From: Intoshia linei
Lineage: Eukaryota; Animalia; Orthonectida
Direction of reading: 5' to 3'
Length of the DNA: 64,000 nt
NCBI GenBank assembly: GCA_001642005.1
Contig: LWCA01000008.1
Span: forward strand, 39,557 to 103,556
Notes under the pieces: model-generated
Told to the model about the DNA's origin: nothing
What the model saw: the letters and a program-made list of their open reading frames with translations, nothing else
Database searches by the model: none
Shown here: piece by piece, positions 22,701-58,313 of the stretch
How positions within the stretch are numbered: the first letter of the stretch is position 1
Layout: each line of letters starts with the position of its first letter
Made by a program: the position numbers and the translations under genes

Positions 22701-25106
22701 AGTTATACGTTTCTGACGCTAATATAAAATAAAATGTTAATGAATTTAAAACGCGCCCCAGAATGTTGGTTTTTATCAAATTTTTGTGTTAATTTTTTTA
22801 AACAAAATGGGAAATTGGGTTTCTGACCCTAAAGGACTCAAATTCTAAAACTAAAAAATAGATAAAAATACGCTCTGGGAAAAACTATATTAGAAATTGA
22901 AAAATTTTTCAATAAATGGTTACATATACAGAAACACACACACATTCATTTTTTGTTGTTTTTGAAACGCACAACCCGAATCAACACACACCTATAAGAA
23001 TTGAAAGGTTTAGTGCTATGTCTCGTAAATATTATCAAAAAATTACGGTATATTGTCCGGATCTATGGCGCATTGACCGACAGCTTTTGTGACATTTACC
23101 AATAATACATGATTAGTTCCAATCAACAAGTTCACAAGCTGTGGTATTCCTCCTGATTTACGAATAGACGATCGATTAAATTGATCTTTAGCCAATTCTG
23201 CTAATGCACCAACTGCATTAATTAAAACCTAAACATTTGTATTCAAGTAATAAAATAATTTACAATTTCAGGTTGATTATTCAATAAAGAGACAAGTCTT
23301 TCAATAACTTTTAAATCCCTAAACTTTTTAACATTTTCAGGGCTAATTGAACATTTCCAAATGGCACCTGTGGCAGCGGACAAAATCTCCTTATTGTTTG
23401 ATGAATCATTGATTAAAGCCACTAAAGGTTTCAATCCATCGTGTTGGCGAACTAGATCTCGACTTTCCACATCTTCAGCACACTAAAAATTTGATTCACT
23501 ACCAACTAACAACTAATTTACCTTAAAAATAGCATTGGCTGCGTGCATTTTTAACTCTTCGTTTTTACTATTTAGATGTTTAACTAAGTCTTGAATCATT
23601 TCTTCTTTACGAATGGCGATTCTGTAATATTTTTCACTGGCGCATTCTTCTAAAGTACCCACTGTTGGTATAAGCATGCGATCATTAGAAGATTTTAATA
23701 ATCTAGCCAATATCTTGATAGCTCCGGCATCGCTGATTGCCTTTTTATTCGATTTACTTTTTGAACAACTCCACAAAGCGAGAACGCCACACCTAGCCAA
23801 TTCAAAATTTTTTTCATTTTCCAGCATTGATTTTTTACTTACTTTTGCAGTAGTATCTTCAGCAGGTAATTTATGCAAAAGTGAAACCTTAATAAATACA
23901 CTTAATTTTGATAAAATATTAAAATACAATTTTATCGATTCCACCATTTTGCCGTACTGTCGTTCTAGCTCTTTTAAATTTTGCTACATTGGAAATAGTT
24001 TCGGCGGAAAGGCATTGCAAATCTTTATCAGGATATTCCAAAATTTTAACCATTACCTTTAAACCTCCCAAATCTGCAATCACTCTTCTAATGTGTGGAT
24101 TGATTGATATTTCTTTCAAAATTTTTAAAGATCCAATCTAAACGAATATTAAAATCTAGACCAACACTGTTAAAACATTAGATACACGTTTATTTCAATA
24201 ATAAAACCTTGCACTTGATTTCATGCGTATCCAAAAGATTTATCAATATTTCCAATCCACCGACATCTTTAATAGCATATTGACAACTTTCAGTGGCTAA
24301 ATTGAATTCACGCATAGAGCATAAAGCTATAATTGTAGCAGTTTGATTTCCAGCCTAAAATTTAATAAAATAATTATGAAAAGTAGTTAGATATTCAGAG
24401 GGTACACGCCATCAATGGTGACTCACAACATGCATTTTTAGAATAACTCGATTTTTTGAAAAAATACACTAATTAAAATAAAATTGAATATAATAGATTA
24501 TGTATTATATGTTTTAAAATCCAAACTGATTAAATATAATGTAAAAATCTAATAAAATAAATGTTAGTTAAAATTAAATTTGAAAAACTATGGTTAGATA
24601 ATTTTTAAAATTAATGTTGTAATAATCTAAATTTAATTTTATAGATTGAAGTCTAGATTTTTGATTTATCAGTAAAAAACGTCTACTGATAATGCAATTA
24701 TAAAATTTACGATTAATTGCTTTTATTTTAAATTGTAAATATTTTAATAATTTTTGATATTTGATAATGAAAAAAGAGTGATTTGCAATTTTTTTGAATT
24801 TGCAAAGTGTCTCTGCAATTGAAATTTAAAACACTTATTGGAAAATCTATTTTTTTAAACACTAGGGCTCTTAATTAATAAACAAATTATTAACGCATAG
24901 CAGACACAAAAATTCAATTTTATACATGTGAGTATGGATAATAACAATTTAAATTATATTACTTTTAAGTATTTAACGAGTTTTTGAATTTGCCAATATT
25001 CAGAAGGCAAATCAACATTATTATCAATGTGCCTGTTAATCAATTCATCTTCATCGTAGCTGTCTGACGAACTTGAATAGTCGCAGTTGTCTTTATATTT
25101 GTCCAT
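19737..25106 (-). CDS. ARMC4: Armadillo repeat-containing protein 4 / outer dynein arm docking complex subunit 2
   Basis: Collinear motifs [112 protein letters not shown] and [20 protein letters not shown]. The 5' end is uncertain. Confidence 0.95.
20831..21569. mobile_element. MITE-like element with TIR TAGGGTGTCCA/TGGACATCCTA, carrying a nested MITE
   Basis: Terminal inverted repeats and a flanking direct repeat ATGTAGTA at 20823-20830 and 21570-21577. Confidence 0.55.
20953..21380. mobile_element. hAT-type MITE with a perfect 8-bp TSD
   Basis: CTGATTAG|CAGTGG...CCACTG|CTGATTAG. Confidence 0.75.
22077..22541 (-). mobile_element. Internally deleted Helitron-like family A element, abutting head-to-head a second 5' end at 22543
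   Basis: On the minus strand it starts TCCTTACTTATATAATATGC and ends TGTACGTAGTACA-TAAGAGTCAACCTGG|T. Confidence 0.7.
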
Positions 25107-25608: not shown

Positions 25609-28600
25609 TCAGAATTTTACACTTTTAGAAAAATTTTTTGCATCTTTGCGATTTTTTATTTCTTCTTTTATTTTACATTGTCTTTCCAACATGGCAATCA
25701 TTATATCAAGAACGGAAATCTTTAACGAATCCTCGTTCATTAAAATTTTACTAAAAAAAATAAAATATATTTATAAATTGTTAATAATTTATTAGTGTTA
25801 AAACTATGTGACTATCCACGTCCAAAATTATATTATACAGCGACATTGTCGTAACCCTTATGACTTAGAAGACAAAAAATGGACCTAAATCAAGTCAAAA
25901 TTCTAAAATTGGCATTTTTTCGACATATTTACTACTGAACTTTATGTAATGACTCCCTCCCTATAATGATTCCACTTGAGAGAATATGCAATCCTTACTT
26001 ATATAAAACTCTTTGTGTGTCTGTGTATGTTATCGTTTATTTCAATAACTAAAAATCTTATAATTTTATAAAGTCCACATTTCTATTACAGCTTTTTCTG
26101 GCTTAAAAGTAAGATAAATTTCAACATTCGAAACTCAGATCTTACCGGTGAAAAACCACAATTATCCGTTTTTATGAAAATCAAACGAGTTCGAGAATTT
26201 AAATATACACTCTGATACAGATTTTAAAATCATAAATATTGTCATAAATTTAAATTTAAAAAAATATATCTTCAGACCAAATATAAATTAAATTAAAATT
26301 AAATTTCAATCTAAATAAGTGACGCCTTCACGGTCAAAAAAGAACTTTAATATTTATTTTTTTTATTTTATTAAAACAAAAAATGTGAAATAATTAACTG
26401 TCCGACAAAAAAAAAAAATTATTCTGATTCAGCTTATTCCAGTTGACATAAATACAAAATTTCAACCCCAGAAATCTAAAAATTTTCGGTGAAATATAAT
26501 TTTTAATATATAATCAACCAATATTTTTTAAATATTTCGATTAAAATAAAAATTAAAAATGTAAATATTAATCCTATAATTTCAAAAAAAATGTGCATTG
26601 AACGTCTACACATTTCCAATAAGAAAATCTATACAATTCATTCCTTCGGATTTTTTTTCGTTGCTACGCAATTTATTATAAAACATCACTCTCGAAAAAC
26701 GCTATTAAAAATTTGGTTTTTTACTTCTAGGACTCTTGATTTTTAAATTAAACGGTAACACACACACAAACATGTAATTTCATGTGAATAAAATTTAATA
26801 CTCATTCATACAGATTATTTTTAAAGCTAATATTTTAATTTTAAATAATCCCAATGGTTAATTACTTTAACTAGTGATAAATAATTAATAAAAATTACAG
26901 TATTACATCAGTATGCGGTCTAATGCTTTCATCCTTGTCCCACATTTTTTCTAAACAATTTTGGACATTGTAGGGAATATTTTGATTATCCATTGGTCTC
27001 AAACTTCGATGAAAAATCTAAAATATAACTAATTAAATACCATCAGGGATGCTAACATCATTATTTTTTTATTAAGAGTTTTAACTTATTATATGTAAGC
27101 CCAAGGGATAAAATTATTAATAAAAATTATAATAAGAAAAAGCAAATTTGAGCGCCATTAAAAAAATTTTTTAATTAATTTGATATTTCATCGTTTCTTC
27201 TCAATAATACGTTAATATACTATGATATAATTTATGATACAATATGTATAATATATGAACAATTTACTGAATATAGAACATTTTGTATAGTTTCAGATTG
27301 CAGATAGTTGAAATAAGGCATACTATACGAAAATATTTGCCATATAATCATTGACAATGTATAAATATTAGATTGTTTTGATTCTTTAAGACCGCGTAAA
27401 GATTTTGGAGAATAATATAAATGATTATGTTTAAAATGTTTTGATTTCATTATAATTGTACCATAAGGAACATTATCAAATATAGTTTTATCTTTTAAAT
27501 AGTAATTTTTATTTGTGTGGTAAAATGAATTTTCTTGCCAAGAACTAATTTTTAAATTCCATTTATAATCTAATAAACAATTTGTGATTTCAAAATTAGA
27601 TAAAACTATTTTTTTTGATAAAAGATAATTTAATCCTTTCGTCTAAAATGTATATTACAACATTGAATAACTAATACTATGTTTAATAATTTACCAATTC
27701 TATGGCCAGAGGAAAAGAGACATTTCTTACTTTTTTAGTTTGACAATCATTGAGAAAAGCTTCTAAATATCCTCTACTACAATAATCTTCCAAATAATAT
27801 ATATAGGAGAATGTTGTAGTGTACCCAAAAAAACTAGTTACATTGTTGTGTCTCAATCGTTTCATTTCGACCATTTTTATTTTAAATTTTTTTTTCATTT
27901 TAAAATTGATATAATTGAAATATTTCATTTTTTTAAACCCGAGTATATCAAAATTAAACTTAACTGGCCATTGAATTATTTCCATATAACTGTTAATCTC
28001 GTCAATGTCCTTTTTATGATTATTCAGAAATGTATAACAATTTATACACTTTTCAATGTTTCTAACTTCTTGAATATTGTCAATAGAACTCAAAGAAGCT
28101 CTCTCTCGGTTTCTTCCTGATTTAAGTTCATTTATTGTTTCCACATATAATTCAATATTCTGCATTGGCACAAAGAACAACTCTTTGTTTATTTTTATAT
28201 TAATTTTATAATACTTGTATATAAACATGCACAAAAGTATAAAAAGTATTAGCAATAAAAGTGGAACAATTATGGATAGAGGGATTGCCCACAATATAGA
28301 ATTGGTATATTTGGAATTTTTTAAATTTTCAATTTCAAAAATGCTTCGCTCATAGGCTAATAAACTCATGGTTTTATTATTGCACGTTATTGAACCAAGA
28401 TAATTTTTCTTTATTTTTTCATAATATGTATTGTTTAATAATATGATACTATTTTCATTCCAGGTTTTGGTTCTGTTAACATTATCAAATATCCAATCTA
28501 AATAACCTAAAAATTCTACTATAGGTAAACAGTATAAATCTCGATAGTTGGATACTACTCGGTGAATGATATCGTAGTGAGATATATTCATATTATCAAG

Positions 28601-31450
28601 TTCGTTAGGCATGTGGTTATGTGTATAATTTTTCCGCATTATTATGTAGACAATAAAATAAATCGGGTACATATTTCTCAGTATTTCATCTAATGACTTA
28701 AGGGAATTATCGCTATCCATTTTGTACGCATTAATCATTGCCGCTTCCAAGCTGTGTCTATTTGGTTTCATTGTGATATTATATTTACTATACAAAAGAG
28801 CATATCGAATATTTCTTGAATTTGCTTCAACTAACGGCAAGTAACCAATTGAATAATCTACCGATAGCAGTACTCCGATTGTTCCAAAACTTTTTTTACT
28901 ATATATACCAATTACATCACGTTTCCAGTTTAAAATACAGCCTTTTGGTAGGATGGTTGATTGTGTGTCATTCGTTGATACCCAACCTATAATATTTCTT
29001 CTACATAATGGATAGATGTCGAAATTAATTAGAGAACTTGTTGCATTATAGTTTTTTTCCATCATTTGAAATGGACCATTAAAAATTCCATAGACTTTTT
29101 TCCAATTTTCGTCTTCGAAACTCAATGCTGAAGTAAATGCATTTGTTAAAGTGGAATCTTTACTGTCATCAGCCACAACTAAAAAATATGCAATATAATA
29201 TAATAAAAATATAATAATATGTGGAAATCGCATTGGTTATCAAAATTTTGGTATTCTTTACAAATTTTCCAATATTACCTAGTAATAAATAAAAAAAGTA
29301 GATCCCTCTCCACGGCTCTGCATAAGGAATGGTACTATTATTTATATATTTATATTTAAAGGATATTTGGGACGTTACTCGTATATAACGATTGTAACAA
29401 AAATGTATAATATACAATATAAATATATATATAATATGTTAATAAAATAAAACTATATATGATGCAAAAATCTAGAATTGATAGTTAAAGCGTTATGGTG
29501 TAAGTAGGAGTTACAACTCATATTTAAAATTGGAGTAGACGTTTTGAAAGTTGTATAAAATATAACAATTTTAAGCAACTATTAAAATTATCACCCGAAA
29601 AATTTATTTTACTGAAACTTGTATATTGTAACTTGTATATACTTATATATAACTTGTACAATATACATCATATATACTTGTATCAGTATATATTTATCAC
29701 TAAATCATAAAATGAACCAAAAATTATTTTCAATGAAAAACTTTCTTCATTTTTACAGCAAATATAGAACAAATTTGAAATTTTTTTATCTACATGTATT
29801 AAAATGATACACTGATTTTCATTAACGAAAAAAATAAATAATTAAAGTAATTTTAACCTTTAAATCAAAAATACTTTTCCTCATAATTATTTTCATAAAA
29901 AAATATAAAAATTTTCATATAATAATAAATTTCAATGGGTAAACTTTCTTTATAAAATTGTCCGGTTTGGTTAACTTTAATATAATAAATTACCAATTAT
30001 TCTCATATGTGGCAAATTCACGTTGACGTTGAGTTTTTGCTAATTTTAAATTTAGTAAATAGTTTAAATTGTGTACAAAAATATATTAACTACTATTAAA
30101 TATTAAACTGAATAACACTGATTAAAAATAAGATAATAAGCAAATATGAATTATAATTTTTACATTCCTGAAAAAATTTTAAAAATGTATCGCGTAGTTA
30201 AAGGATTAATTAATATTTAAATATTTATATTAATAACTGTCATTTCTGTAGTTATATACAACTAAACTAATATATAAAGTTAATTAACTTTTCAATGAAT
30301 GACAATTATTGTATAGAATCAAATAATTATTGTCTAATTTGTGACTTACGTCTAATAAAATCATAAAAATCTTACTCTATGAAATGTGACCCATTTCGTG
30401 TTAAATTTAAAAAAATGTATACATGCGTTATGATTATTCTTTATGGTGGATTTCAAATTTTGTCTGTTTGTTAATTATTAAAACTTAATTTAAAAAAAAT
30501 CTGGATTATCAATAATTTTGTGTCATGGGATTATATTATTTTTTATCAGACTATGCTTAATAAATATTACTTGCTGAGTTAAAAAAATCATTTTAATTTA
30601 TTAACAAAAATAAATTTTATTATTAAAATCCAAATTCAAAAAACCGTTTATAAAGTACATTTAATACATGTCATGTATATTAATAATAAATTATTAAAAT
30701 TTTTAAAAATATATTAAAATGTAACAATAGTTAATGTTATAAAAATAAAAATATAAATACAATAATTTGATCGTCCCAATACTTATACGTTCCATTGTAT
30801 ATACCCACAATAATTTTCATATTTAAAAATAGAGTAACATTTTCTGGTACACTGGGTAAATTGTATGATATGACAATAGCTCTAAATATAAGTATATACT
30901 TATTAAAATATATAAAAATACCCTGCCATGAAAGGAAAAGAAAGAAAATTTTTTTCAATTGGTTCAGATGTATTATTTTCATTGACATGTAAATTATACG
31001 TTTTGATAATATTGCTAATATTGGCTTTGCCAGTGAAAGCATACTCGATTCTCGATTTATTATAAAGTTTGGGGAAAACAGCAGTTTGAAGAGCTTGGCG
31101 ACTCCCAGCAATATAAAAATGTTCTCTAACATCCATAAACATGGATCGAGAATACTACAAAATTATTATAAACATAAAAAATAATTAAAAAAATAATTAG
31201 CAAGATGCCTCTATTAGTCGACTATTAGTATGAATCGTGTGAGATGCATCGCAAAAATCAAAGGTTGCAGTTATAGCTATTTTAAAATTACCTTGTAGTC
31301 GTTAAACCAATTTTTTCTCAATGGATATAGAAACTCTTCTCCAATGCCTCTAATATGAATGTGTACACTTGACTTTGACAAAACGGTAAAATTTGATTTG
31401 CATTTTGATATTATCGCAATAATAATAAAATGTAGTATGAAATACATCAT
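25609..31450 (-). CDS. Single-pass receptor: signal peptide, PstS-like phosphate-binding-protein ectodomain, TM helix, receptor-guanylyl-cyclase-type pseudokinase and hinge helix; no cyclase domain found
   Basis: Phase-compatible exons at 31292-31450, 30922-31154, 30761-30881, 29994-30039, about 27695-29178, about 27270-27642, about 26903-27017 and about 25609-25751. PstS-like motifs: RGIGEEFLYPLRKNWFNDY; FPFMAGAIVISYNLP..IVGIYNGTYKYWDDQIIQKLNVNVNLPHMRIIVV; FTSALS...WKKVYG; SIGYL; YPIYFIVYIIMRKNY. TM is ILWAIPLSIIVPLLLLILFILLCMFIY. Kinase-homology motifs: MKRLRHNNVTSFFG, EDYCSRGYL, KGLNYL, NCLLDYKWNLKIS, WDKDESIRP. Confidence 0.85.
25992..26670 (+). mobile_element. Family A Helitron-like copy in a receptor-gene intron
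   Basis: Starts A|TCCTTACTTATATAA. The body is closely similar to 1700-2400. Confidence 0.75.
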
Positions 31451-31584: not shown

Positions 31585-32750
31585 TTAATTAATTTCTAAA
31601 TCGTGCCTCATATCCAAGAGGAACCAAAACGATATTAGAAAACCAATAATCATAGCACTAGAAAATAAAATTGATAATAATATTAGGATGAATGTGTGGA
31701 TCTTTATGTCATCAACACTTTTTTTATAGCAACCCTAATCCAATTTTATAAAAGATTAAATTTATAATTACGTCAACGTGATAGTAATAACTGATGTGCA
31801 TTCGTGATTTAGCATCATTTTGGCACCTGTAGAGATTCCTCAAATCGAGATTATTAATATCAACACTATTTAAATATTCGTATCTTGTATTGATTAAAAC
31901 ACAACAACTTTTGGGTACAACCATATAGTCATCATTTTGCAAATTTCGTATAGTAATATTCTGAGAATATTTTTAGTTTACAATTCAGAGTTAATACACG
32001 TTACATTTTTGTTGTTGTGGTATTTCCAATCACTATTTTCATAATCATATGCACCAGAAGACCCGCAACATTGATACTGATTTAAAAAAATGTAAATTTA
32101 AAGATACAAATATATATCAAAAAGGGTTATTTGGGATTGAAATTACACGAATTTGAATGTTGTCCCATACATATTTCCAATCGGTATTTTCTGCAACAAG
32201 TGATTTCACTTGCTCCTTCATACCAATCTTTAAATCAGTGTCTATCTAATAGATAAAATACAAATTAATAAAATCAAATCATACCGTATTTCTGAAACGA
32301 CTTGTTGTATGAGCTATCGTTATAAAAGTAAAGGCATTTCCGATTAAACCGGCGCAAAACTAAAATAAAAATTGAGCTTCACAAAATATTAAATGTAAAG
32401 AATATTTAAAAAAGCTAATAATCTAAATTCACCAAAGCCAAAAGAAATTCACTCTGTCGAATAATTGCAATATACCCAATTACAAAAAGTATACAAGTTG
32501 AGCAACCACATATAATTGAAATGATAATGTTTAAAAACATAATGTTGTCACTTAAACTCCGTTTCATTAAACTATACAATCCGTATGAATAGGGATACAA
32601 ATATGCAAAACAAGCACATGTTGTACAAGATAATCCAATCAACTAAAAAATAAATTATATGTTACTAAATAATTAATATTATAATTTATAATAAACCAAA
32701 ATAAAAACATTATATCCCAATAAAAAGTATTTAGATGTGTTTTTGAACAT
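31585..32750 (-). CDS. Tetraspanin
   Basis: SKYFLLGYNVF (TM1), WDNIQIR|YQCCGSSGAYDY (CCG motif), VPKSCC, and GCY before TM4, with the stop at 31585. There may be an extra upstream exon near 32895-32930. Confidence 0.9.
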
Positions 32751-45949: not shown

Positions 45950-48900
45950 ATGAAGCCTTATTGTAACAAAGGCCTTTTATATTGTATTTTTATATACACG
46001 TTATCTAACCTAAACTACATTTTTGCGGTAAATGTTCAATTTGGTAAATTTTATTTATTCGCTATTTTTCTATTTTCAAATGCATTACACTGAGATTACA
46101 CGCTATTTTAGATGAAATTACCGTTAATATGGATCGTGTTCATGGAAACGCAGTCGTAAGACACGAAAACGATAGCCCTAGCGGTCAAACAAAAGCCTGG
46201 CTGGTGAAAGATAAACCCTTACCGGAGGGAATTATATATGCATTTCATATATACACATCAGAATTTACTATAACCGATTTTTATGGGACATATGACCCAA
46301 GTCGGTTGGAACGAAATATAGATTGCCAAATTTGGCGACTTATGAGCACTACAACCGAGTTGTATAAATTAATATGGTCTAAAACTTTTACAATTAATGC
46401 TGCACTCACTCAAAGATATATACAGGTGTTTTTATTATACAAAAATATTCACATAGTGTGTATTTGATTTTATTGTTGTTCAAACCTTAAATTAAATGTT
46501 TTAAATTTTACATCATATTTTAGTCATAAAACATAATTAATTTCATATGACCGTGTGAGTCACGTAAATTTTTAACTGTAGTCTTTAAAAAATATTTTCA
46601 TATACTTAGTATGTAATGCATAACCTGTTTTATAGCATAATCTGAAAAGACATGTATGTAGGGCCGTGGAAATGGGGTTAGGGGACATATGTCCTGAACT
46701 TATAATCATGAGGGCCTACATTTTTAATTATTAATAGTTAATATTGGAAAATTTCTTAAATATACTAAAATTTCGTAACCAGTGTGATTTCCAACAGTTA
46801 ATTTTAATTTTTAGATAATTAACTAATTAACCATTTTTTAAAAAATTTTATAAAGGCCTACAATTTTCATCTGACCGGGCCTAATGCTAGCTCTTCACTG
46901 CCCAGCATGTATATCCTAAAAATATTTTTTTTATTTTAAATTTTTAACATCAAAATCGTTATGATTTATGAGATGTGTATTAGAAAAATTTTATTATTTA
47001 TAATATTAATCCCCAATGGGGATTCCCCATGTTAGTGGATATTAGGGACAAACAAAAATTTTTATATTTTACATGGAATATACTTTTTTCCTGTCTGCTG
47101 ATTTTGTATGTCGCAGTTATCCGTCCCGTGAATTATGACTTTTGATGAAAATAATTAAATAAAATGTAATTCTAATTAAGCGTAAAATTAAATTTAATCC
47201 TGTGCGATAAAAATTCACGATGACAATTAAAACCAAAAAACAATTAACCTTAAAATTTTAAAGAGTCAATTAAACCAGTGTTTCCCATTTTTTTAAATCT
47301 TGCGTACGGCAAAAATCTAAAAATATGTTGACCTGCCGGTAAAATATAGCAAAATAAATTGAATGTTAATACAGTCAAAATCGTTATTAAAGGAATTTTT
47401 GTTAACGGAAATTCCAGTTTATAGGAATAAATTACATGTGAACGGCATTACATGTTATTTTTTCTTAAAGAATTTTTATGAACCAAAAATTCCGTTAATA
47501 AAAACTCACTTGCCTTCATTTTTTTACTAATTAAAAGTCAATTTATTACGTTTTTAATCAAATTTTTAATAGATATTTAATTGGATAGAGTTAATTAAAA
47601 ATAATTATTATCATTGCGGGAATGTTATTTTTCACTTTATTTTATTTCTGTAAATAATGTAATTATAAAATTTTTCCATATTCCAATTCCCAATTCAATT
47701 TTCATATCTCTTTTATTTTAACATAACTGTAGATAATTGTAATAAATAAATACATTTAGCTGGAAATACCACTAATTGAACGAATGGCAATAAATGCACG
47801 AGATGTAATAGGATTTCGTTCAGACGAATATGGATCAAATTTAATTTCAATGCAATTCTCAAAAAATAGGGAAGTATTGCACACTACATTAATACCAAGA
47901 ATTAATCAAACTATCGATTTTATCCACCATCCTTTACCTGCCGCATTTTCTATTGGCGTTGAAATAGAACAACGTAAATTTTAATAAAAATACATAGTCA
48001 TTATTATACATTATTATATATTTATTAATTAATTATTTTAAATTAAATTTATATTTATTAACATTTAATTTTAATTTTTAATTAAATAGGAAAGTAATTT
48101 GATAATTTTTTTGTTTCACTTAAAATTAATACTTTTAAAAGTAATAACCATATTTTAAATTATAGAGTGAATTCGATAGCACAATCAGTCCCATCAATAT
48201 TTCATTTACATTGCTGTTTATAATTATTTTTTTTAATAATTTAACAAAAAAATAATTACAATATCATTTTTCATTTTGGCACAAAAAAAATTAAACAACC
48301 TCTAATATACCATAGCTTCTTTACTGCACTTTTTCTTGCATGGTATACAATATTTAATTTTCAATCTCCCGAAAAAATTTAAAATTATTATTATCGTTTT
48401 TAATATTAAACAATTAAAACATATTTTGAACAAATCCTCAATTTTATATTTTCTGATATTTCTCAAAGTATGTTATGATATTTATGTAATATGGAATGCC
48501 CTTAATTTGATATGTATTTCTTGCATTAATACTATACTAATGATGAAAATTATTTATATTTTTAATAACAAAACGCAAAACTTATTACTTACTCATTTTT
48601 ACTATACAGGTACTTATCCACGTGCCTGCAATGAAATTTAAGTTTTTATGAAAAAAAGTAGCAAAGTAGAAAAAACTGGTCAATGTGTAACATTTCATTA
48701 ATGTTTTTCTTGGTATTTTAATTCAATTTTCAACATGTATAGTATAACATATGTAATAGTATTTGAGGATGATTTTATGAATATATTTTTAATTACACAT
48801 GAACTACAGTTTAAATTAATTAATAAAGAATTTAGCTATCTATCCACCAATTGAAGGTCCAAAAGGTACAAAAGGAGAACCAGGAATAGGTGGTACTGGT

Positions 48901-51900
48901 GGTGGTGTTATTATAGTCGGACCAACTGGTTCAATCGGACAAAAAGGAGACAGAGGTTATCTTGGTCCAACTGGTCCAAAAGGAAATAAAGGTCAAACTG
49001 GATCTAAAGGTAATGAAGGTATTCGTGGAAAGAAAGGATATGGAGTTTCAATAAAAGGAAACCGAGGAATACCTGGATTTACGGGTGAAAAGGGTGAACC
49101 TGGTAGTGGTAGTGGTGGTGGAGGAAATGGAGAAAAAGGTGATAAAGGAATGATAGGCAACACTGGTAGAACTGGATATAAAGGAGATCGAGGTTATATT
49201 GGTCCCACCGGAATTAAGGGCGATAGAGGATGGATGGGACCTACAGGGATAGATGGAAATATGGGTGGAATAGGTAAAACGGGTCCAATTGGAAAGCCCG
49301 GCAATAACGGGGAAAAAGGAGAACCCGGTCGAGACGGTTTTATTGGAGGAAATTCTCAGACAGGTCCTAAAGGAGATAAAGGATCCTATGGAAGAACTGG
49401 TATCAAGGGAGATCGAGGTTACATGGGACCTACTGGAATAAAAGGCAATCCACCAATAATATTTAATATACATTATTTTAGGTAGCCGTGGTTTAACAGG
49501 CATTACCGGTATAAGAGGAATTGATGGTAGAGATGGCAAGGACGGTATAAAAGGTAACATTGGACCTAAAGGAGAAAGAGGTATTATTCATGCTTAACAT
49601 TTTTTAATTTAATATACAGTGGTCACTTTTGAAACAGTTCTAAATTAATGACATTGTTAATGCGATGTGATGCCGTCCTTAAAATTTCCGTAATAAAATG
49701 TTTACATATTTCTTTCCCTAATTCGATGGATCAAAAAATACGACGAGTTGCACGGTCATTATAATTTATTTCTCTGAAAAAATGTATTAAACAACATTTC
49801 AATGTTAAGTAATGGTTATTCGGTCGATTTTGACAAAGAACCGTTTTAGGACTCTTTAGAGGGCGAGCACTGTATTTATATAATACATTTAATATTAAAA
49901 ATAGGAGACGGAGGTAACTCTAATGGTAGTGCCACTGGAAAGAAAGGAGAAGTCGGTAGAACCGGAATAACTGGTATGCAAGGACCAATGGGAGTAATGG
50001 GACCCACTGGTCGCAAAGGTAACCGTGGTCATTCGGGTGTAAGCGGAGCAAAAGGTGATGCCGGAATAAACGGCAGAAATGGCAGAGATGGTACTGATGG
50101 AATTATTGGAAGAAACGGAAGAACAGGACCAGAAGGTATATTTAATCTTTACTGATGGCATTTCTTCTAGGTAAAAAAGGTTCAATGGGACATACTGGAA
50201 CTAAAGGAGAACGTGGATATCTGGGACCGACAGGTATAAAAGGTAAATCGTTACAAATATCAAATATTTTAAAAATTTTCCAGTTTCCTAATTTTTTCTG
50301 ATGTATCAACTGAGCTTAGCTAAATACAACAGGAATTAATGAAATATGAATTCATTATTTATTGTTACAATATTAAATTTTGATTATATTCAATTAAATT
50401 TTAGGTGAAAGAGGAAAAGATGGTACACTTTCCAAGGGGTATTACATACATTTACCAATAAAATTTACTTTATATAACACATCTACAACCAGGGATTGGA
50501 AATAATTGATTGCAATCAATTATTTTGTATAAACCAATTAATTGTTTGCTAAATATTAATTAAATTGGTTACAATCAATTAATTCCAATCCATGTCTGCA
50601 ACTATGAAAATTATCATTCAAATTATTATTTATATTATTTAATTAATCAATATTATTTAATATTTAAATTTTAAATTTAATATTATTTATACTTAATATA
50701 ATTTCATCAATTAGTGTAAAAGGTCCAACAGGTAACGATGGCGAAAAAGGTAATCCAGGAATAAAAGGTCTGCAAGGTTATAAAGGTAATTAATTTGATT
50801 TGACTTTAGTATTTAACAATATTGTCATTACTATATATTATAGGTGAAAGAGGATATAATGGAGAGCCTGGAAAAGATGGTTAATGTATATTTTATATTT
50901 TAATCATTTATTAAATAGGATCGCCTGGAAGAATGGGGATTGACGGTATTACCGGAAAAAAGGGAGAATATGGTAGAACCGGTAAAACGGGTAGCAAAGG
51001 TGACGTGGGTCCAATGGGCCCAACTGGAATAAAGGGAAGAATAGGCAGAACGGGTAAAAGAGGTGCACCTGGTCGTGATGGAACATCTGGAAAAGGTAAA
51101 TTATAGGTTTTGCAAGTATATAATTATTATTATTAGGAAAAGATGGTAGAATTGGAGATCCAGGAAAAGACGGCAATAATGGTAGAGATGGATTTGATGG
51201 TAGAGACGGCATTAATGGCAATGATGGAAGACCAGGAAGTAGTGGAATGCCTGGAAAAGACGGAATAACTGGAGTAAAAGGTGACTTAGGAAGAACCGGT
51301 TTGATGGGTCCTACAGGAAAACCAGGAAACCTTGGACCTACCGGAATGAAAGGGCAAAAAGGGCAAACAGGATCAATCGGACTTCCTGGTAAAGACGGGA
51401 CAATCGGAAAAGTCCAAATCGGAAAAACAGGCGACACAGGACGGCCTGGTATTGATGGAATTACGGGACAAAAAGGTAATGATGGAGTAACCGGAAGATC
51501 TGGACCCAAAGGCGATAGGGGATACATGGGACCAACAGGAATAAAAGGACGCATTGGTTCAACGGGTAAGAGAGGTCTAGACGGACTTGATGGAAAAAAA
51601 GGTGAAAGAGGGTTTGACGGAATTGATGGAAAAACCGGAATAAAAGGTAATTTTAATTAATAAAAATCATGTAATGTGTAAATTTCATTATTATTGTTAT
51701 TGAGGATGTAACAAATTCAACAATGTCTTGAATAACTTTTCACGCTTGACTGAAATTTAAGTACTATAAAATAAAATATATACCTGTGAATGTATTATTA
51801 ATACTTTTTAGGTCAAAAGGGCGAAGTTGTTATTGCAAAATCAATTACTGGTAGAAAAGGTGACATCGGTCGTACAGGCATAACTGGAGAACCTGGTAAA

Positions 51901-54900
51901 ATCGGATTTATGGGACCAACAGGTCGAAAAGGACAAAAAGGTGCTACTGGTTCAACTGGCTCAATTGGAAGACCAGGTAAGGACGGAAACGAAGGAAAAC
52001 ACGGATTACCTGGTAATGATGGAGTTACTGGTGAAACAGGTAATGCACCTTATTAATTTTCAACATACAAGTTTAGGTCTAAAGGGTGTAAAAGGAAAGG
52101 AAGGAAAAACTGGTTCAAAAGGTGATATGGGTGTAAATGGAAGAACAGGAGCTAAAGGATCTCGTGGAATTACAGGAATAAAAGGAGAAATTGGTGTTAG
52201 AGGTAGAGATGGAAATGGAGACAAAGGTTTGACAGGCGATAAAGGACAAAGTAACTTTATGTTGAACAAATTTAACTCATTTAGAGGGAAATAGTGGAGT
52301 TAATGGAAAAAAGGGAGATCGTGGTTATGACGGGAAGAATGGTATTATAGGTATATTATAACTATAAAACTGTTCTTACATTAAATTTATTAAGGTAGTA
52401 TTGGATCAACCGGTTCAAGAGGACCCACAGGTCTACAAGGACGTAAAGGTCAAACCGGACAAACTGGTACCATCGGAAACCCTGGACACCAGGGAAATAC
52501 TGGGTTAAAAGGAAATAGAGGTGCAACGGGTTTGAGAGGTATAGATGGTAGTAAAGGTGAACGAGGTTTCTCAGGAAATGATGGCAGAAATGGTAACACT
52601 GGAAGGAATGGTATAGTTACATATACATTTTACAAAATTTTATATAGGTAGAGATGGACAAACGGGAATAAAGGGTGATAAGGGTCAAAAAGGACTAGGA
52701 ATAATGGGTATTAAAAAATATAATGTTATACAAAATCAATGTTAAGTACATTTTATAACAACTAAATGACTTTTGTAATATTGATAATATTCTTTTAACA
52801 CATTTTAAAAATTTAATAAAAAAAAATCATAAAATATATAGATATATGAGAAAGAAAGGTTGACTTGCGCTCAATTGAAAGGCTCATAACAATTTTTTTT
52901 TAAAAAACGCACCAGAAAATAATAATTAAGACAAATTATTGAAATAAAGGCTGCGTATCCCATGATGACAAATTTATACATAATATATTTATTTATTTCA
53001 AAATTTACTACATTATAATCATCTTCTATTATAAATAAAATATAATTAAAAGGACCCACTGGAGCACCTGGAAGAAATGGAAGAACAGGAAGCAGAGGTA
53101 ATGACGGTCGAGATGGGATGACAGGTAAAAAGGGAACAGATGGATACCCAGGTATAACTGGAAGACCGGGATTAGATGGAAGAGATGGTATTATCGGCCG
53201 AAGAGGTAAAACAGGAGTTCCAGGACAACCTGGACGTGGAATTAAAGGTATAATATAATTAATACAACTAATGTAGCCAATAGGTGATATTGGACCCAAA
53301 GGAGTATCAGGTGGCAAGGGTGATACTGGTATAAAAGGAGATTATGGTGAAAAAGGGCAAAAAGGTACTGCTGGAATTGGAATTACCGGAGTGAGAGGAG
53401 ACAAAGGATATAATGGACGTACTGGACAAACTGGTCAAATCGGAAAAAAAGGAGAATTAGGTTTTGCCATAACAATAAAATTTAATATACATAGGTCCAA
53501 CCGGAATTAGAGGACAAAGAGGTAGAACTGGAAGTGCTGGAAAAGATGGTAAGTATAAAATGATTTAAATAAATAAAAACTAGGTTTAACTGGATCGAGA
53601 GGATCCAAAGGTGATAGAGGAAATGATGGAAACGATGGATTAATAGGCCGAGCTGGAAACGATGGAAGAAAAGGTATATGAATATATTTAATAAATTTTA
53701 ATATTTTATGAAAGGCGATAATGGTCAAACGGGTATTCAAGGCGATAGAGGACTTACCGGACCTAAAGGTCGAATGGGTATGACTGGTCAAAGAGGAAAT
53801 GACGGATTACGTGGTATAATTCAAATTTAACAAATATAGCTTATATTAGGATTAACGGGAAAGGATGGACTCACCGGTTCGGTAGGGAGAAAGGGCTCAA
53901 GTGGGCAAGATGGCAGAGATGGAACTAAAGGCAACATCGGTAGCATTGGAAGGCCCGGGCATAAGGGAGACAAAGGAAATGAAGGTTTAACTGGAAAAAT
54001 TGGATTTCCTGGGATAACAGGAATAGGTACATAATTTTAATATATCACTCAGATATATTTATATAGGGAGACCTGGAATCGATGGAGCCAAAGGATCTAG
54101 AGGTGACCGTGGAAGTGATGGCAGAGATGGTCAAAAAGGTCAACCAGGAATAAATGGTTTAATCGGTTCTCTTGGTTTACAAGGAATAAAAGGAATATCC
54201 GGTAAGACAGGAATGAAAGGAGACAGAGGATTTTCTGGTCAAATCGGTCGTAAAGGAGAACGTGGGTTCAAGGGTGATTTAGGATTAGATGGCAAAGATG
54301 GTTTAGCTGGTTCTCCGGGAAGAGCAGGACCAAAGGGTATGACAGGTAATCCCGGATCACGTGGATTTGAAGGAAGAACTGGAGCGCCTGGTTTAAATGG
54401 TAGAACGGGTACAGCTGGAACAAAAGGACATAAAGGTATATTATAAATAAACTTAAATTTTTTTTTAATAGGTGATAGAGGATTAACTGGAATAATAGGA
54501 TTTCCAGGAATAAAAGGTTTAATTGGTGATCGAGGTAATGATGGTGTTGACGGTAGAACTGGAAATCCAGGAAGTAAGGGTCAAAAAGGAACAATTGGTA
54601 CATATATTCTATAAATATATATTATTTTGAAAATAGGGTTACAAGGATTAACTGGATCTGCGGGACGTAGAGGTAATTAAAATACAGAATAGATAATAAA
54701 ATATATACAATAATAAATTATTAGGTCAAAATGGAATTGATGGAAAAGAAGGCCCAGCTGGTAAAACCGGAAACATCGGACACAGGGGAGACAAAGGAAA
54801 TATTGGTAGATCTGGATTGACAGGATCACCTGGTAGAACTGGACCAGAAGGAGAACGTGGATTTAAGGGTGATGCTGGAATTGAAGGTAGAACAGGTTCG

Positions 54901-57900
54901 GCAGGTAGAAAAGGAAATGATGGAAATAAAGGCAACGATGGCAGTAAAGGAGATAAGGGTTCAGAAGGTCCTAAAGGATTAACTGGTCGAAACGGTATAA
55001 ACATTGTTTGCTAAATTAACTACGTTCTAGGTATCAAAGGAGACATGGGACTTACCGGAAGGCAGGGACCTAAGGGGCCTTTAGGTCTAATGGGAAGGGA
55101 AGGTATAAAAGGATCTGCAGGATCTGCAGGAAGAAAAGGTTTATTGTTATATAACTAAATAATGTAAATTATAGGTTCTAAAGGTGATCTTGGTTTAAAG
55201 GGTGATAGAGGTTATAATGGTATTGATGGGCGTTCAGGTAACAAGGGCGCTAAAGGTAACACTGGATCAAAAGGACGGACTGGGTCAATGGGACCAAAAG
55301 GTATGAAAGGAAATAGGGGTATGCCCGGAATTGGAATTAGCGTCAAGGGTGATCTTGGAATGACAGGAAGTATTGGAAGAAAAGGAGATAAAGGTAAAAT
55401 AAATAGATAGTTTATATAAAATGTCTAGGTATGACTGGATCCATTGGTATGAAAGGAAGCAAAGGAAACATAGGAATTGTATGAAATTTATTTATATTAA
55501 TGCATAGTTAACAAGGGAAAGACAGGTTTAACTGGAAATAAAGGGATGGATGGCAGGGACGGCATAGGAATCAAAGGTCAAAAAGGAGAATCTGGTCGAA
55601 TAGGACCAATTGGGGATAGAGGTTTGACGGGTTCCATAGGTAAATATTAACATTGATATTCTTAATTGTTATTTAGGCAGACCAGGAGACAAAGGAGAAA
55701 TTGGTCAAAGAGGAATCGGAGAAAAGGGTGAAAGAGGAATAACCGGTATAATTTATTTATTTATAAATGTAACGGCATAAAATAGGTATGAATGGAAGAA
55801 CTGGTTCTGTCGGAAGAAAAGGAGATGCTGGAGATAGTGGATTTGATGGAGTGAATGGAATCGATGGACGAAAAGGAGATAAAGGTTCAAATGGTTTGAC
55901 CGGTTCTATTGGACAAAATGGCCAACCAGGTCGTCAAGGCATAACTGGATCAGCTGGTAGGAAAGGTGAACTGGGTCCAAGAGGATTTATTGGGGATCGA
56001 GGCAATTAATTTATTTATTATATTTATATGATATTGTAGGTTCACCTGGTTCACGAGGTAGTCAAGGAATTGAAGGTTCAAAAGGAGAAATTGGTCAGCC
56101 TGGTAATCTATTTTTTTATAAACTAACAATTATTAAGGTCTAACGGGTCAAAATGGAAATCCCGGATCAGCTGGGTTAACTGGGAGAGCAGGACCAATAG
56201 GACCAATTGGACTTACCGGTATGAAAGGCCCGAGAGGTGGATCAGGGCCAAGAGGTTTCACTGGTGATAATGGAAATGATGGACTTGATGGTTCAAAAGG
56301 AATTAAAGGCTCTAAAGGAGACACTGGATTACGTGGAATAACTGGATTCGGTCTTCGAGGTCCAAAGGGTTTAACTGGAAGTGCCGGAAGAGATGGTTCA
56401 AAAGGTGAAATCGGTAGGAAAGGCGATAATGGTTTAAAGGGAAGCGATGGAGTTATGGGACCACGAGGTAATTATACATTTATACTTTTCATGGATTATT
56501 TGACAATGAATATTTTATATATTAGGCCTTACTGGTCAACCAGGGATTGGAATAAAAGGAGAAATTGGCTTAACCGGGTCAATTGGTATATTTTAACTTG
56601 AAAATTAATTTAAATTTATTAATAGGTCGAAAAGGTAATCAAGGAATAAATGGCTTGGATGGAACTTCTGGACGACCGGGACAAAAAGGTGATATTGGAA
56701 GTCCTGGAATTACTGGTTTAAGAGGTCAAAAAGGAAGTGATGGTAAAGGGTCAAAAGGAAATAAAGGAGACACAGGATTAACAGGACAAGTTGGAAGTAG
56801 AGGATTAGATGGTGAAAAAGGTTCAAGAGGGCTTACTGGTAATGCTGGTAGAGATGGGCCTGTTGGACTTAAAGGAATACAAGGAGATACCGGCTCAAAA
56901 GGAAGTTTAGGCTTAAAAGGAAGTGTTGGACTAAGAGGGCTTACAGGTTCAAAAGGCAATAGTGGCTCAAAAGGCAATATTGGTTTAACCGGAAACAAAG
57001 GTAGTATTGGTATAAAGGGGAATAGAGGAATAACTGGTATGGCTGGAAAAGACGGTTTAACTGGTAAAATTGGATCAAAAGGAGACAGAGGAATAACCGG
57101 AATGGGTCTACCAGGAATAAAAGGAATGCAAGGAATTAAAGGTTGTTTTAATTAAACATAAAATTAAATGTATTTAGGAGAAAACGGATTTTCCGGCCTA
57201 CCTGGCTCAGCGGGACCAAAAGGAACCGCAGGACTTACAGGCCCTAAAGGTTTTTATGTTCTACTTTAATCATACAATATTTAGGAAATAATGGATTAAC
57301 CGGCAAAACTGGATTAAAAGGAAATGCTGGAATAGACGGAAAAGAAGGACTAACAGGAAGAGCAGGAACAAAAGGAGAAACTGGCATACGTGGTTATAGT
57401 GGTTTTACAGGACCAAAGGGAGAAAGAGGTTTTAAAGGAGAGGCTGGATCAGGATCAGGAGGTGGAATTGGCATCTCTACTGCATCCGATTTATGTACCG
57501 CAAAACAATGCAACCAAAAATGCAACGTCCGCTATTCACATAGTGAAGCCACTTATATCGCTGTCTGTACTTGCAAAATTGATTATCGTTACATAGAAAT
57601 TGACGGAAACGATTGCAACTGTAATTTAACATTATAATTTTATTTACTAACTTTTACCAAAATTAGCAATTAACGAATGCAGTTACTTTAACGGGTTGTG
57701 CGAGCAGAAATGTACCAATCAAAGCATTGGATATATTTGCAGTTGTGATGAAGGTTATGAACTATCAAACAATTCTCACTCTTGTCACGGTAAATTTAAT
57801 GTATATTTATACTAAAAATTAAGATATTAATGAATGCCTGGAAATAACATCTTGCTCTGCTGAATCATTATGCTTAAATACCGTGGGAAGTTTCAAGTGT

Positions 57901-58313
57901 ATAACCTTAGAACAATATCAAGGTAAAACGGTTTTTATATAAACTAATTATATTTAGTAACCTCTTCTGAAATACAAAAAGTGATTCAGGAAACTCAACA
58001 TGACAAATTAAATGGTCTTTTGAAAGAAAAGGGATCTACAAATATAATTTTGTATTCAGTGATTGGTGCATTATTCATTTTGTTAATATCAGGCAGTGTA
58101 TTTATGCTTCGCTTCTATCGTAAAACTAACAGAAGATTTTCTAATATATGTGGAAATTTTTGTGGGCAATCAAATATGGACCTGACAGGAATTGTTCGAG
58201 ATGGACATTCTGAAACTTTATCATCCGTATACACTATATCAGGAAACCTATCAGACACCCAAAATCAATCAACACAATCGAACGAAAACAATGGTTTAAA
58301 ATTTCAATGTTGA
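45950..58313 (+). CDS. Giant transmembrane collagen: signal peptide, ~180-aa globular domain, ~2000-aa interrupted Gly-X-Y region, 3 EGF/cbEGF modules, TM helix and cytoplasmic tail
   Basis: Exon 1 MKPYCNKGLLYCIFIYTLSNLNYIFA starts at 45950, followed by exons at about 46112-46425 and 47760-47973. About 36 Gly-X-Y exons lie at 48835-57445. Then INECSYFNGLCEQKCTN..GYICSCDEGY and DINECLEITSC..CLNTVGSFKC, and TM IILYSVIGALFILLISGSVFML-RFYRK. Confidence 0.88.
46659..46905. mobile_element. hAT-type MITE
   Basis: CATGTATG|TAGGGCCGTGGA...TTCACTGCCCAG|CATGTATA (8-bp TSD, 1 mismatch). The internal 'aatcatgagggcctac' block is shared with about 18780-18950. Confidence 0.6.
49617..49872. mobile_element. 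TA-flanked MITE in a collagen intron
   Basis: TA|CAGTGGTCACTTTTGAAACAGTTCTAAA ... TTTAGGACTCTTTAGAGGGCGAGCACTG|TA, imperfect TIR. Confidence 0.5.
50490..50594. mobile_element. 105-bp hAT-type mini-MITE
   Basis: TCTACAAC|CAGGGATTGGAA...TTCCAATCCATG|TCTGCAAC. Confidence 0.65.

What the first reader, a model, noticed from the sequence alone, without database searches (positions are those of the whole stretch)
25609..31450. Animal membrane receptor with a PstS-like ectodomain fused to a guanylyl-cyclase-type pseudokinase
Seen: four small exons that the ORF track leaves unlinked or misses splice in phase onto the 516-aa ORF. The joined ectodomain follows the bacterial ABC phosphate-binding protein PstS along its length: GIGEEFLYPL..WF.DY (GAGATF.P...W..Y), FP..AGAIV.SYNLP, IY.G..KYWDD..I.KLN..V.LP...I.VV, FT.ALS....W, SIGY, and YPI....Y....K. 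A TM helix and a kinase-homology domain follow. Known: well-studied receptor guanylyl cyclases carry ANF-receptor (class I PBP) ectodomains, whereas PstS is a class II PBP. Inference: this is a small-molecule or ion-sensing receptor family built from a PstS module, possibly of bacterial origin and now intron-containing. I know of no functional characterisation of such an animal receptor, but could not search for one.
Basis: partly seen in the sequence, partly recalled or inferred. Interest (0 to 1): 0.92.

Follow-up and report, generated by a model that had tools for sequence, protein, structure and literature searches.

The report
Cyclase-less PstS-type receptor of Intoshia
This is an eight-exon gene for a membrane receptor whose outer domain resembles the bacterial phosphate-binding protein PstS; it is a very divergent, truncated member of an apparently unstudied receptor family of molluscs, annelids and ribbon worms that may sense phosphate.

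Summary
On the minus strand, eight exons (31450-25609) join in phase through canonical AG/GT sites. They encode a signal peptide, a PstS-like ectodomain, one TM helix, a guanylyl-cyclase-type kinase-homology domain (KHD) and the start of the hinge helix, then a stop.

Searched exon by exon, the NCBIfam PstS model TIGR00975 hits exon 3 (7e-6) and exon 5 (9.5e-8) collinearly.

The gene is not an orphan. It is the single Intoshia copy of a lophotrochozoan family with the architecture PBP_like_2 + KHD + cyclase-homology domain. Databases name members "ANP receptor-like" or "retinal GC-like". I found no paper on the family.

A profile of 11 members, run against all six-frame pieces of the window, hits only the predicted exons, in order (exon 2 and the 15-aa exon 4 do not score).

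Family members keep all eight phosphate-coordinating positions of E. coli PstS. Their cyclase domains lack key catalytic residues.

The Intoshia copy is more reduced. It has no cyclase domain, acidic residues replace T10 and R135, and its branch is very long.

Splicing is supported by homology only. No RNA evidence was obtained.

The parts
31292..31450 (-). Exon 1: start codon, hydrophobic signal peptide, and the first PstS strand and loop (G-I-G-E-E-F where the family has G-A-G-A-S-F).
   Evidence: The ATG is the first after an in-frame stop 12 nt upstream, and the donor is GT. It aligns to family profile positions 15-48, but is not significant alone (E about 0.5-1.3).
30922..31154 (-). Exon 2: the rest of the PstS N-lobe, very divergent, with an insertion.
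   Evidence: AG/GT sites, phase 0 in and phase 2 out, 77 open codons in 25% GC DNA. Only its last ~10 residues align to the family. It has no PDB, Pfam or NCBIfam hit on its own.
30761..30881 (-). Exon 3: the best conserved PstS segment.
   Evidence: TIGR00975 at E=7.2e-6, profile 79-117. M. tuberculosis PstS-1 (1pc3) at 2e-4. Family profile at 1.5e-11, positions 107-142.
29994..30039 (-). Exon 4: 46-nt micro-exon that links the two lobes.
   Evidence: AG/GT sites, phase 0 in and phase 1 out. It aligns at family profile 146-159, exactly between E3 and E5, but is not significant alone.
27695..29178 (-). Exon 5: C-terminal two thirds of the PstS-like domain with two insertions, Cys-containing stalk, TM helix, juxtamembrane segment with a W-P-x-K motif, and the N-lobe of the kinase-homology domain.
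   Evidence: TIGR00975 at 9.5e-8, profile 164-278. Family profile at 2e-40, positions 161-562. PF07714 at 8e-4 on its tail. 79 homologues found in the 1.84-billion-protein library.
28217..28297 (-). Transmembrane helix (27 hydrophobic residues followed by K-Y-Y-K).
   Evidence: Read from the translation. It aligns with the TM helix of all family members.
27268..27642 (-). Exon 6: core of the kinase-homology domain. It has no HRD Asp, and the DFG-equivalent Asp is also lost.
   Evidence: PF07714 at 1.8e-5, above its cut-off. Family profile at 7e-13, positions 563-683. A 52-nt intron lies upstream.
26899..27017 (-). Exon 7: C-lobe end of the kinase-homology domain.
   Evidence: Family profile at 0.0019, positions 687-722. 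AG/GT sites read.
25609..25750 (-). Exon 8: start of the hinge/dimerisation helix, then the stop codon (25611-25609). No cyclase domain follows.
   Evidence: It aligns at family profile 725-761, weak alone (E about 1-2). There is no PF00211 match on the contig and no cyclase-part hit in the window. The next gene on the same strand starts at 25106.

Best explanation
Shown. The stretch is one intact eight-exon gene of about 892 codons from a very AT-rich spiralian parasite genome. Earlier notes of this scan name it Intoshia linei. It encodes a type I membrane protein made of a signal peptide, one PstS-type (class II periplasmic-binding-protein) module, a TM helix, a receptor-guanylyl-cyclase-type pseudokinase and about 35 residues of the hinge helix. 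It is the only copy in this genome of a lophotrochozoan receptor family with the architecture PBP_like_2 + KHD + cyclase-homology domain.

Inferred for the family. The ectodomain closes on orthophosphate or a similar oxyanion, because all eight phosphate-coordinating positions of E. coli PstS are kept. The signal passes through the TM helix to the KHD dimer. The cyclase-homology domain lacks the guanine-specifying Glu and the transition-state Arg in all 11 members checked. Output is therefore probably not homodimeric cGMP synthesis. It more likely depends on the KHD as a scaffold, or on pairing with a competent cyclase.

Inferred for the Intoshia copy. It has lost the cyclase-homology domain outright and has acidic residues at two phosphate-binding positions. 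It most likely no longer binds phosphate. It probably acts as a non-catalytic partner or modulator through its KHD and hinge stub, for example with the canonical receptor cyclases encoded elsewhere in the genome.
For: - Gene model: canonical splice sites and consistent phases.
- PstS model hits on two separate exons, collinear, and PstS chains in the PDB.
- 79 homologues, carrying PF12849 + PF07714 + PF00211, from molluscs, nemerteans and annelids.
- The family profile hits only the predicted exons among 2789 six-frame segments, in order and with gaps of at most 4 profile positions at the tested junctions.
- Single copy in the genome.
- No cyclase domain on the contig or in the window.
- Phosphate-site residues are conserved in the family but not in Intoshia.
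- Catalytic residues of the cyclase domain are replaced in all 11 aligned members.
- Other cyclase-bearing loci exist in the genome.
- The open frame of 494 codons in E5 would be very unlikely in 25% GC DNA without selection (own arithmetic).
Against:
- E2 cannot be aligned to the family except at its end, so positions S38 and D56 are read by eye only.
- The branch is about five times the family median and its composition is biased, so orthology to a particular subfamily is unresolved.
- Ligand binding, dimer partners and any output are untested inferences.
- The joined protein was never searched or folded.
Confidence: 0.8

Rival explanations
1. The Intoshia protein is still a working anion or phosphate sensor, with a remodelled binding site that keeps the ancestral ligand class.
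For: The fold-defining segments, F11 and probably S38 and S139 are kept. The ORF is intact.
Against: T10 is Glu. R135 is Asp or absent. The S-G-T loop is altered, and D56 is not recognisable. The R-S-G-T/S half of the site is kept in about 70 of the 79 relatives whose record covers it. Added negative charge in the pocket should repel phosphate (inference).
Confidence: 0.1
2. The gene is a decaying relic: a young pseudogene, or an unexpressed remnant of a family member that lost its 3' end.
For: Loss of the cyclase part, loss of ligand residues, an extreme branch length of 3.35 substitutions per site against a median of 0.67, and no RNA evidence.
Against: Eight exons with intact splice sites and no internal stop over about 892 codons in 25% GC DNA. 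Family-specific motifs in the juxtamembrane segment and the KHD are kept. The whole genome evolves fast, according to papers listed.
Confidence: 0.1
3. The model is incomplete: a cyclase-coding exon lies further away, or is reached through the GT inside exon 8.
For: A GTAAAA lies 9 nt before the stop in exon 8. Genome searches score only the best candidates.
Against: No cyclase-part hit in any frame of the 64-kb window with the family profile, and none on the contig with PF00211. Another gene starts 500 nt downstream on the same strand.
Confidence: 0.05

Closest known systems
Receptor guanylyl cyclases (e.g. human NPR1/GC-A, GC-C)
   Same: Type I topology, a kinase-homology domain without the catalytic HRD Asp, and a hinge helix. 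The nemertean relative P0009 matches NPR1 at 6e-63 from the TM helix to the cyclase domain.
   Different: The ectodomain is a PstS-type class II PBP module instead of ANF_receptor. The family's cyclase domain lacks the Glu and Arg needed for GTP turnover. The Intoshia copy has no cyclase domain at all.
Bacterial phosphate-binding protein PstS (TIGR00975; E. coli 1ixh, M. tuberculosis 1pc3)
   Same: Collinear sequence match over the whole module: P0009 against E. coli and Yersinia PstS at about 3e-34, and Intoshia exons 3 and 5 against TIGR00975. Family members keep all eight phosphate-coordinating positions.
   Different: It is tethered to a TM helix and a signalling domain rather than free beside a PstCAB transporter, and it is interrupted by introns. 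The Intoshia copy has replaced T10 and R135 with acidic residues and carries two insertions.
Lophotrochozoan proteins auto-named 'atrial natriuretic peptide receptor 2-like', 'retinal guanylyl cyclase 2-like' or 'speract receptor' (e.g. Tubulanus XP_074655677.1, Haliotis XP_071091629.1, Helobdella XP_009029882.1)
   Same: Same architecture and same order of segments. The window's large exon 5 matches them at up to 2.7e-20 by phmmer. The family profile scores exon 5 at 2e-40 and also scores exons 3, 6 and 7.
   Different: About 25-28% identity only. The Intoshia copy has no cyclase-homology domain, a degenerate ligand site and a very long branch.
Fungal Glutamate-family (class C) GPCRs with a PBP_like_2 N-terminal domain (Spizellomyces SPPG_06488 in PMC3251606; Endogone P0098)
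   Same: A PstS-type module used as the sensor of a eukaryotic membrane receptor, with the eight-residue site intact. P0098 is 34% identical to the nemertean ectodomain.
   Different: The module is fused to a 7TM domain rather than to a single TM helix plus pseudokinase, and it occurs in a different kingdom.
Venus kinase receptors of invertebrates (PMC4026697) and the cyclase-less natriuretic receptor NPR3 (from general knowledge)
   Same: A periplasmic-binding-protein fold serves as the ectodomain of a single-pass animal receptor (VKR). A receptor-cyclase relative works without a cyclase domain (NPR3).
   Different: VKRs have a class I flytrap and an active tyrosine kinase. NPR3 keeps the ANF_receptor domain and lacks the KHD. 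Neither is homologous in the ectodomain.

Membership tests
Receptor guanylyl cyclase | Signal peptide, extracellular ligand domain and a single TM helix | tested here: met
   Translation and alignment with family members.
Receptor guanylyl cyclase | Kinase-homology domain lacking the catalytic Asp | tested here: met
   PF07714 on E6 (1.8e-5) and on the E5 tail (8e-4). The H-G-N-type loop is replaced by L-S-N and there is no DFG Asp.
Receptor guanylyl cyclase | Coiled-coil hinge between the KHD and the cyclase | tested here: inconclusive
   E8 aligns at profile 725-761 but only at E about 1-2, and it stops after about 35 residues.
Receptor guanylyl cyclase | C-terminal class III cyclase catalytic domain (PF00211) | tested here: not met
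   No PF00211 match on contig C1771. No hit to the cyclase part of the family profile in the 64-kb window.
Receptor guanylyl cyclase | ANF_receptor (class I PBP) ectodomain of the classical members | tested here: not met
   No PF01094 hit on any exon or on nine relatives. The hits are PF12849/TIGR00975 instead.
PstS (TIGR00975) | Sequence homology along the PstS module | tested here: met
   E3 at 7.2e-6 and E5 at 9.5e-8, collinear. Both are far below the equivalog cut-off of 205 bits, so the gene is a homologue and not an equivalog.
PstS (TIGR00975) | Eight phosphate-coordinating residues (E. coli T10, F11, S38, D56, R135, S139, G140, T141; the residue list is from established PstS structural work) | tested here: not met
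   In Intoshia, T10 is Glu, R135 is Asp or absent, and G140/T141 are changed. S38 and D56 lie in the unalignable E2. The residues are met in relatives wherever the record covers them.
PstS (TIGR00975) | Free or lipid-anchored partner of a PstCAB transporter | tested here: not met
   The module is fused in one reading frame to the TM helix and the KHD.
Lophotrochozoan PBP_like_2-KHD-cyclase-homology receptors (unnamed) | Collinear match to the family profile from the N-terminus to the hinge | tested here: met
   E5 at 2e-40, E6 at 7e-13, E3 at 1.5e-11, E7 at 0.002. E1, E4 and E8 fall at the expected positions. There are no other hits in the window.
Lophotrochozoan PBP_like_2-KHD-cyclase-homology receptors (unnamed) | Invariant juxtamembrane W-P-G-K motif | tested here: met
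   W-P-V-K sits at the aligned position. The motif is invariant in the 11-member alignment A2.
Lophotrochozoan PBP_like_2-KHD-cyclase-homology receptors (unnamed) | C-terminal cyclase-homology domain | tested here: not met
   Absent in Intoshia. Pfam also fails to detect it in some relatives, namely Biomphalaria, Bulinus and Elysia.

The most novel reading that the evidence does not exclude
The lophotrochozoan PstS-ectodomain receptors are dedicated extracellular phosphate (oxyanion) receptors of animals. They signal without making cGMP themselves, having a pseudokinase and a degenerate cyclase domain, and work through a partner. The Intoshia copy, with acidic residues in the former phosphate pocket and no cyclase domain, has been re-tuned to another ligand or to a ligand-independent modulatory role in a parasite that lives inside its host.
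Probability: 0.3. Interest if true: 0.85.

Novelty: new variant of a known kind. Interest (0 to 1): 0.6.

Why it matters
How animal cells sense extracellular phosphate is still debated, and to my knowledge no dedicated receptor with a recognisable phosphate-binding module is established.

This gene led to a whole receptor family in molluscs, annelids and nemerteans. The family couples a PstS module, with all eight phosphate-coordinating residues intact, to receptor-cyclase-type signalling domains. Database names such as "ANP receptor-like" hide this, and I found no paper that describes it.

The idea can be tested directly by measuring phosphate binding of recombinant ectodomains and running signalling assays.

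The Intoshia copy is a natural truncation. It shows which parts (ectodomain, juxtamembrane motif, KHD) are retained when the ligand site and the cyclase domain are lost.

Tried and rejected
- Word-indexed homology search with the 516-aa ORF found nothing. This was a sensitivity failure, since the exhaustive phmmer search found 79 relatives.
- Pfam found no PBP_like_2 on single exons. E1 and E2 gave no meaningful PDB hit.
- E2 could not be aligned to the family by hmmalign except at its end.
- No paralogue exists in the genome.
- A maximum-likelihood tree of the exon-5 region could not place Intoshia, because of its long branch and deviant composition. The careful search did not finish and only the quick tree was seen.
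- RNA evidence was not obtained. The look-up of sequencing runs listed three runs of unknown kind. X1 holds 0.46 of the sampled words, which equals the exon fraction 2679/5842. X1 also has 49 Mb of contigs, close to the genome size, so this figure proves nothing.
The local six-frame scans read the whole window file as the target, which includes them.
- All searches ran exon by exon by reference, and the joined search and the joined fold were left out.
- A bacterial origin of the module was not tested, because no set of standalone bacterial PstS sequences was fetched.
- ANF_receptor identity, bacterial contamination and recent transfer were rejected: the gene has introns, host-like composition and a fusion to the KHD.
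Full report
**What is there.** The window is 23-28% GC around the finding. On the minus strand, the first ATG after an in-frame stop is at 31450. It opens a hydrophobic signal peptide. Reading the sequence and tracking phases by script gives eight exons:
- E1 31450-31292
- E2 31154-30922
- E3 30881-30761
- E4 30039-29994
- E5 29178-27695
- E6 27642-27268
- E7 27017-26899
- E8 25750-25609

Every intron starts with GT and ends with AG, and the phases fit throughout. The coding length is 2679 nt, about 892 codons. With roughly 9% stop codons expected per random codon at this composition (own arithmetic), the 494 open codons of E5 and the 77 of E2 are not chance.

**Rules followed.** Every search below was made exon by exon by reference, and the joined search and fold were left out.

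**Is the ectodomain PstS-like?** Pfam does not score PBP_like_2 on single exons. The NCBIfam PstS equivalog model TIGR00975 does hit two separate exons in the right order: E3 at 7.2e-6 (profile 79-117) and the ectodomain part of E5 at 9.5e-8 (profile 164-278). Against PDB sequences, E3 matches M. tuberculosis PstS-1 at 2e-4. The only two hits of the E5 ectodomain are phosphate-binding proteins, at collinear positions. E1 and E2 give nothing on their own.

**The rest of the protein.** E5 continues into a 27-residue TM helix (28297-28217), then a basic stop-transfer sequence and the N-lobe of a kinase-like domain. E6 scores PF07714 at 1.8e-5. The catalytic-loop region has the receptor-cyclase form without the HRD Asp, and the DFG-equivalent Asp is also gone. 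This makes it a pseudokinase. E7 ends the kinase fold. E8 encodes the start of the hinge helix and then a stop.

**It belongs to a family.** The word-indexed search found nothing. An exhaustive phmmer search of 1.84 billion representatives with E5 found 79 relatives, the best at 2.7e-20.
- Nine relatives were scanned and all carry PF12849 (PBP_like_2) plus PF07714. Seven of them also carry PF00211.
- Named members come from gastropods, bivalves, a chiton, nemerteans (Tubulanus, Lineus) and annelids (Owenia, Paralvinella, Dimorphilus, Helobdella). They are labelled "atrial natriuretic peptide receptor 2-like", "retinal guanylyl cyclase 2-like", "speract receptor" and similar.
- The nemertean member P0009 matches E. 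coli and Yersinia PstS structures at about 3e-34 over the whole module. It matches human NPR1 at 6e-63 from the membrane to the cyclase domain.

**Test of the gene model against the family.** I built a profile from 11 full-length members and ran it against each exon, and against all 2789 stop-to-stop segments of the window in six frames. Every hit below E=1 is a predicted exon on the minus strand, in order. Profile ranges below are where given there, and those scans differ by a few positions:

| Exon | Profile positions |
|---|---|
| E1 | 15-48 |
| E3 | 107-143 |
| E4 | 146-159 (exon-wise run only) |
| E5 | 161-562 |
| E6 | 563-687 |
| E7 | 687-724 |
| E8 | 725-761 |

- Gaps of at most four profile positions at the tested junctions are strong homology support for the splice model.
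- E2 should cover 48-106 but is too divergent to align, except for its last ten residues.
- Nothing in the window matches the cyclase part of the profile. PF00211 finds cyclase domains on other contigs but none on this one.
- Another gene on the same strand starts at 25106.
- The gene is single-copy.

**Ligand site.** I fetched E. coli pstS and aligned it with the family. The eight positions that coordinate phosphate in E. coli PstS are T10, F11, S38, D56, R135, S139, G140 and T141 (list from established structural work). In the family they read S/T-F-S-D-R-S-G-T/S. All four N-lobe positions (S/T-F-S-D) stand in 32 of the 34 relatives whose record reaches them, the two exceptions being I for F11 in P0008 and an unaligned stretch in P0111. 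In about 70 of 79, R-S-G-T/S is kept in the C-lobe half. The same is true of fungal 7TM fusions.

The Intoshia copy differs:
- T10 is Glu.
- R135 is Asp or missing, and the S-G-T loop is changed.
- S38 and D56 lie in the unalignable E2. By eye, a G-S pair is kept and the G-S-D motif is not.

**Cyclase domain of the family.** Taking the NPR1 alignment as the guide, seven catalytic positions were read in the 11-member alignment.
- The guanine-specifying Glu and the transition-state Arg are replaced in all 11.
- The transition-state Asn is kept only in the two nemerteans.
- The second metal Asp is lost in five.
- This domain is also the least conserved part of the alignment.
- Pfam no longer detects it in Biomphalaria, Bulinus and Elysia.

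The complete loss in Intoshia is the end of a trend in the family and not an oddity.

**How it probably works (inference).** In typical members, a PstS module that closes on phosphate or a like oxyanion would drive the TM helix and the KHD dimer. The output is unlikely to be homodimeric cGMP synthesis. It more probably uses the KHD as a scaffold or a competent cyclase partner. The Intoshia protein keeps the ectodomain scaffold, the W-P-x-K juxtamembrane motif, the KHD and a hinge stub, but neither the phosphate site nor the cyclase domain. I take it to be a non-catalytic partner or modulator, and rate this mechanistic part at about even odds. Rival readings are listed separately: a working anion sensor, a decaying relic, or a missed cyclase exon.

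**Placement.** A quick maximum-likelihood tree of the exon-5 region shows at least two subfamilies; the chiton, for example, has one of each. The Intoshia branch is 3.35 substitutions per site against a median of 0.67, with deviant composition, so it cannot be placed. The family's range fits the spiralian or annelid affinity of orthonectids described in the papers listed. The species name comes from earlier notes of this scan and was not verified here.

**Literature.** Eight full-text searches found no paper on a PstS or PBP_like_2 ectodomain in receptor guanylyl cyclases or any animal receptor. The nearest published case is a PBP_like_2 domain on a fungal Glutamate-family GPCR (PMC3251606). 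The library lacks most subscription journals, so "not described" is provisional.

**Limits.**
- No RNA evidence was obtained. The three runs that hold the stretch are of unknown kind.
I worked beside those places and used none of their letters as a query afterwards. The local scans read the whole window file as the target.
- The origin of the module (bacterial transfer or old eukaryotic inheritance) was not tested.

Noticed in passing
P0098, P0111, P0115 (fungal), P0112, P0110, P0108, P0109, P0113: PBP_like_2 modules with all eight (P0111: the five aligned) phosphate-coordinating residues intact also occur fused to class C 7TM domains in fungi (Endogone and a chytrid). Unnamed records also show them fused to a cyclase domain alone (P0112, 1256 aa) and to a protein kinase (P0110). 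PstS-type sensors on eukaryotic-type signalling proteins seem wider than the animal family.
   Followed up: partly
relatives P0001, P0004, P0005, P0013 and about 30 others: Many 860-900-aa database entries of the family begin at ectodomain profile position about 104-110, the same place as the Intoshia E2/E3 boundary. They look like single large ORFs called on genomic contigs. This would mean an intron position shared with Intoshia, and so an old, intron-bearing module.
   Followed up: no
window 23919-25106, minus strand: The next gene downstream starts at 25106. Its ORF pieces read like an armadillo-repeat protein. It lies only about 500 nt from the receptor's stop codon.
   Followed up: no
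window 48000-58000: GC rises to 31-39% with a strong positive GC skew of up to 0.46, unlike the rest of the window.
   Followed up: no
G000 contigs C762, C3070, C2345, C2663, C1130: Several loci with good PF00211 matches, some within long open frames of 650-767 aa that also match the KHD. These are presumably the canonical receptor cyclases of this genome and candidate partners. Their ectodomains were not examined.
   Followed up: no
window 31724-31942, minus strand: An ORF about 270 nt upstream of the receptor's start codon looks like the 3' exon of another gene. The receptor is therefore tightly bounded on both sides.
   Followed up: no
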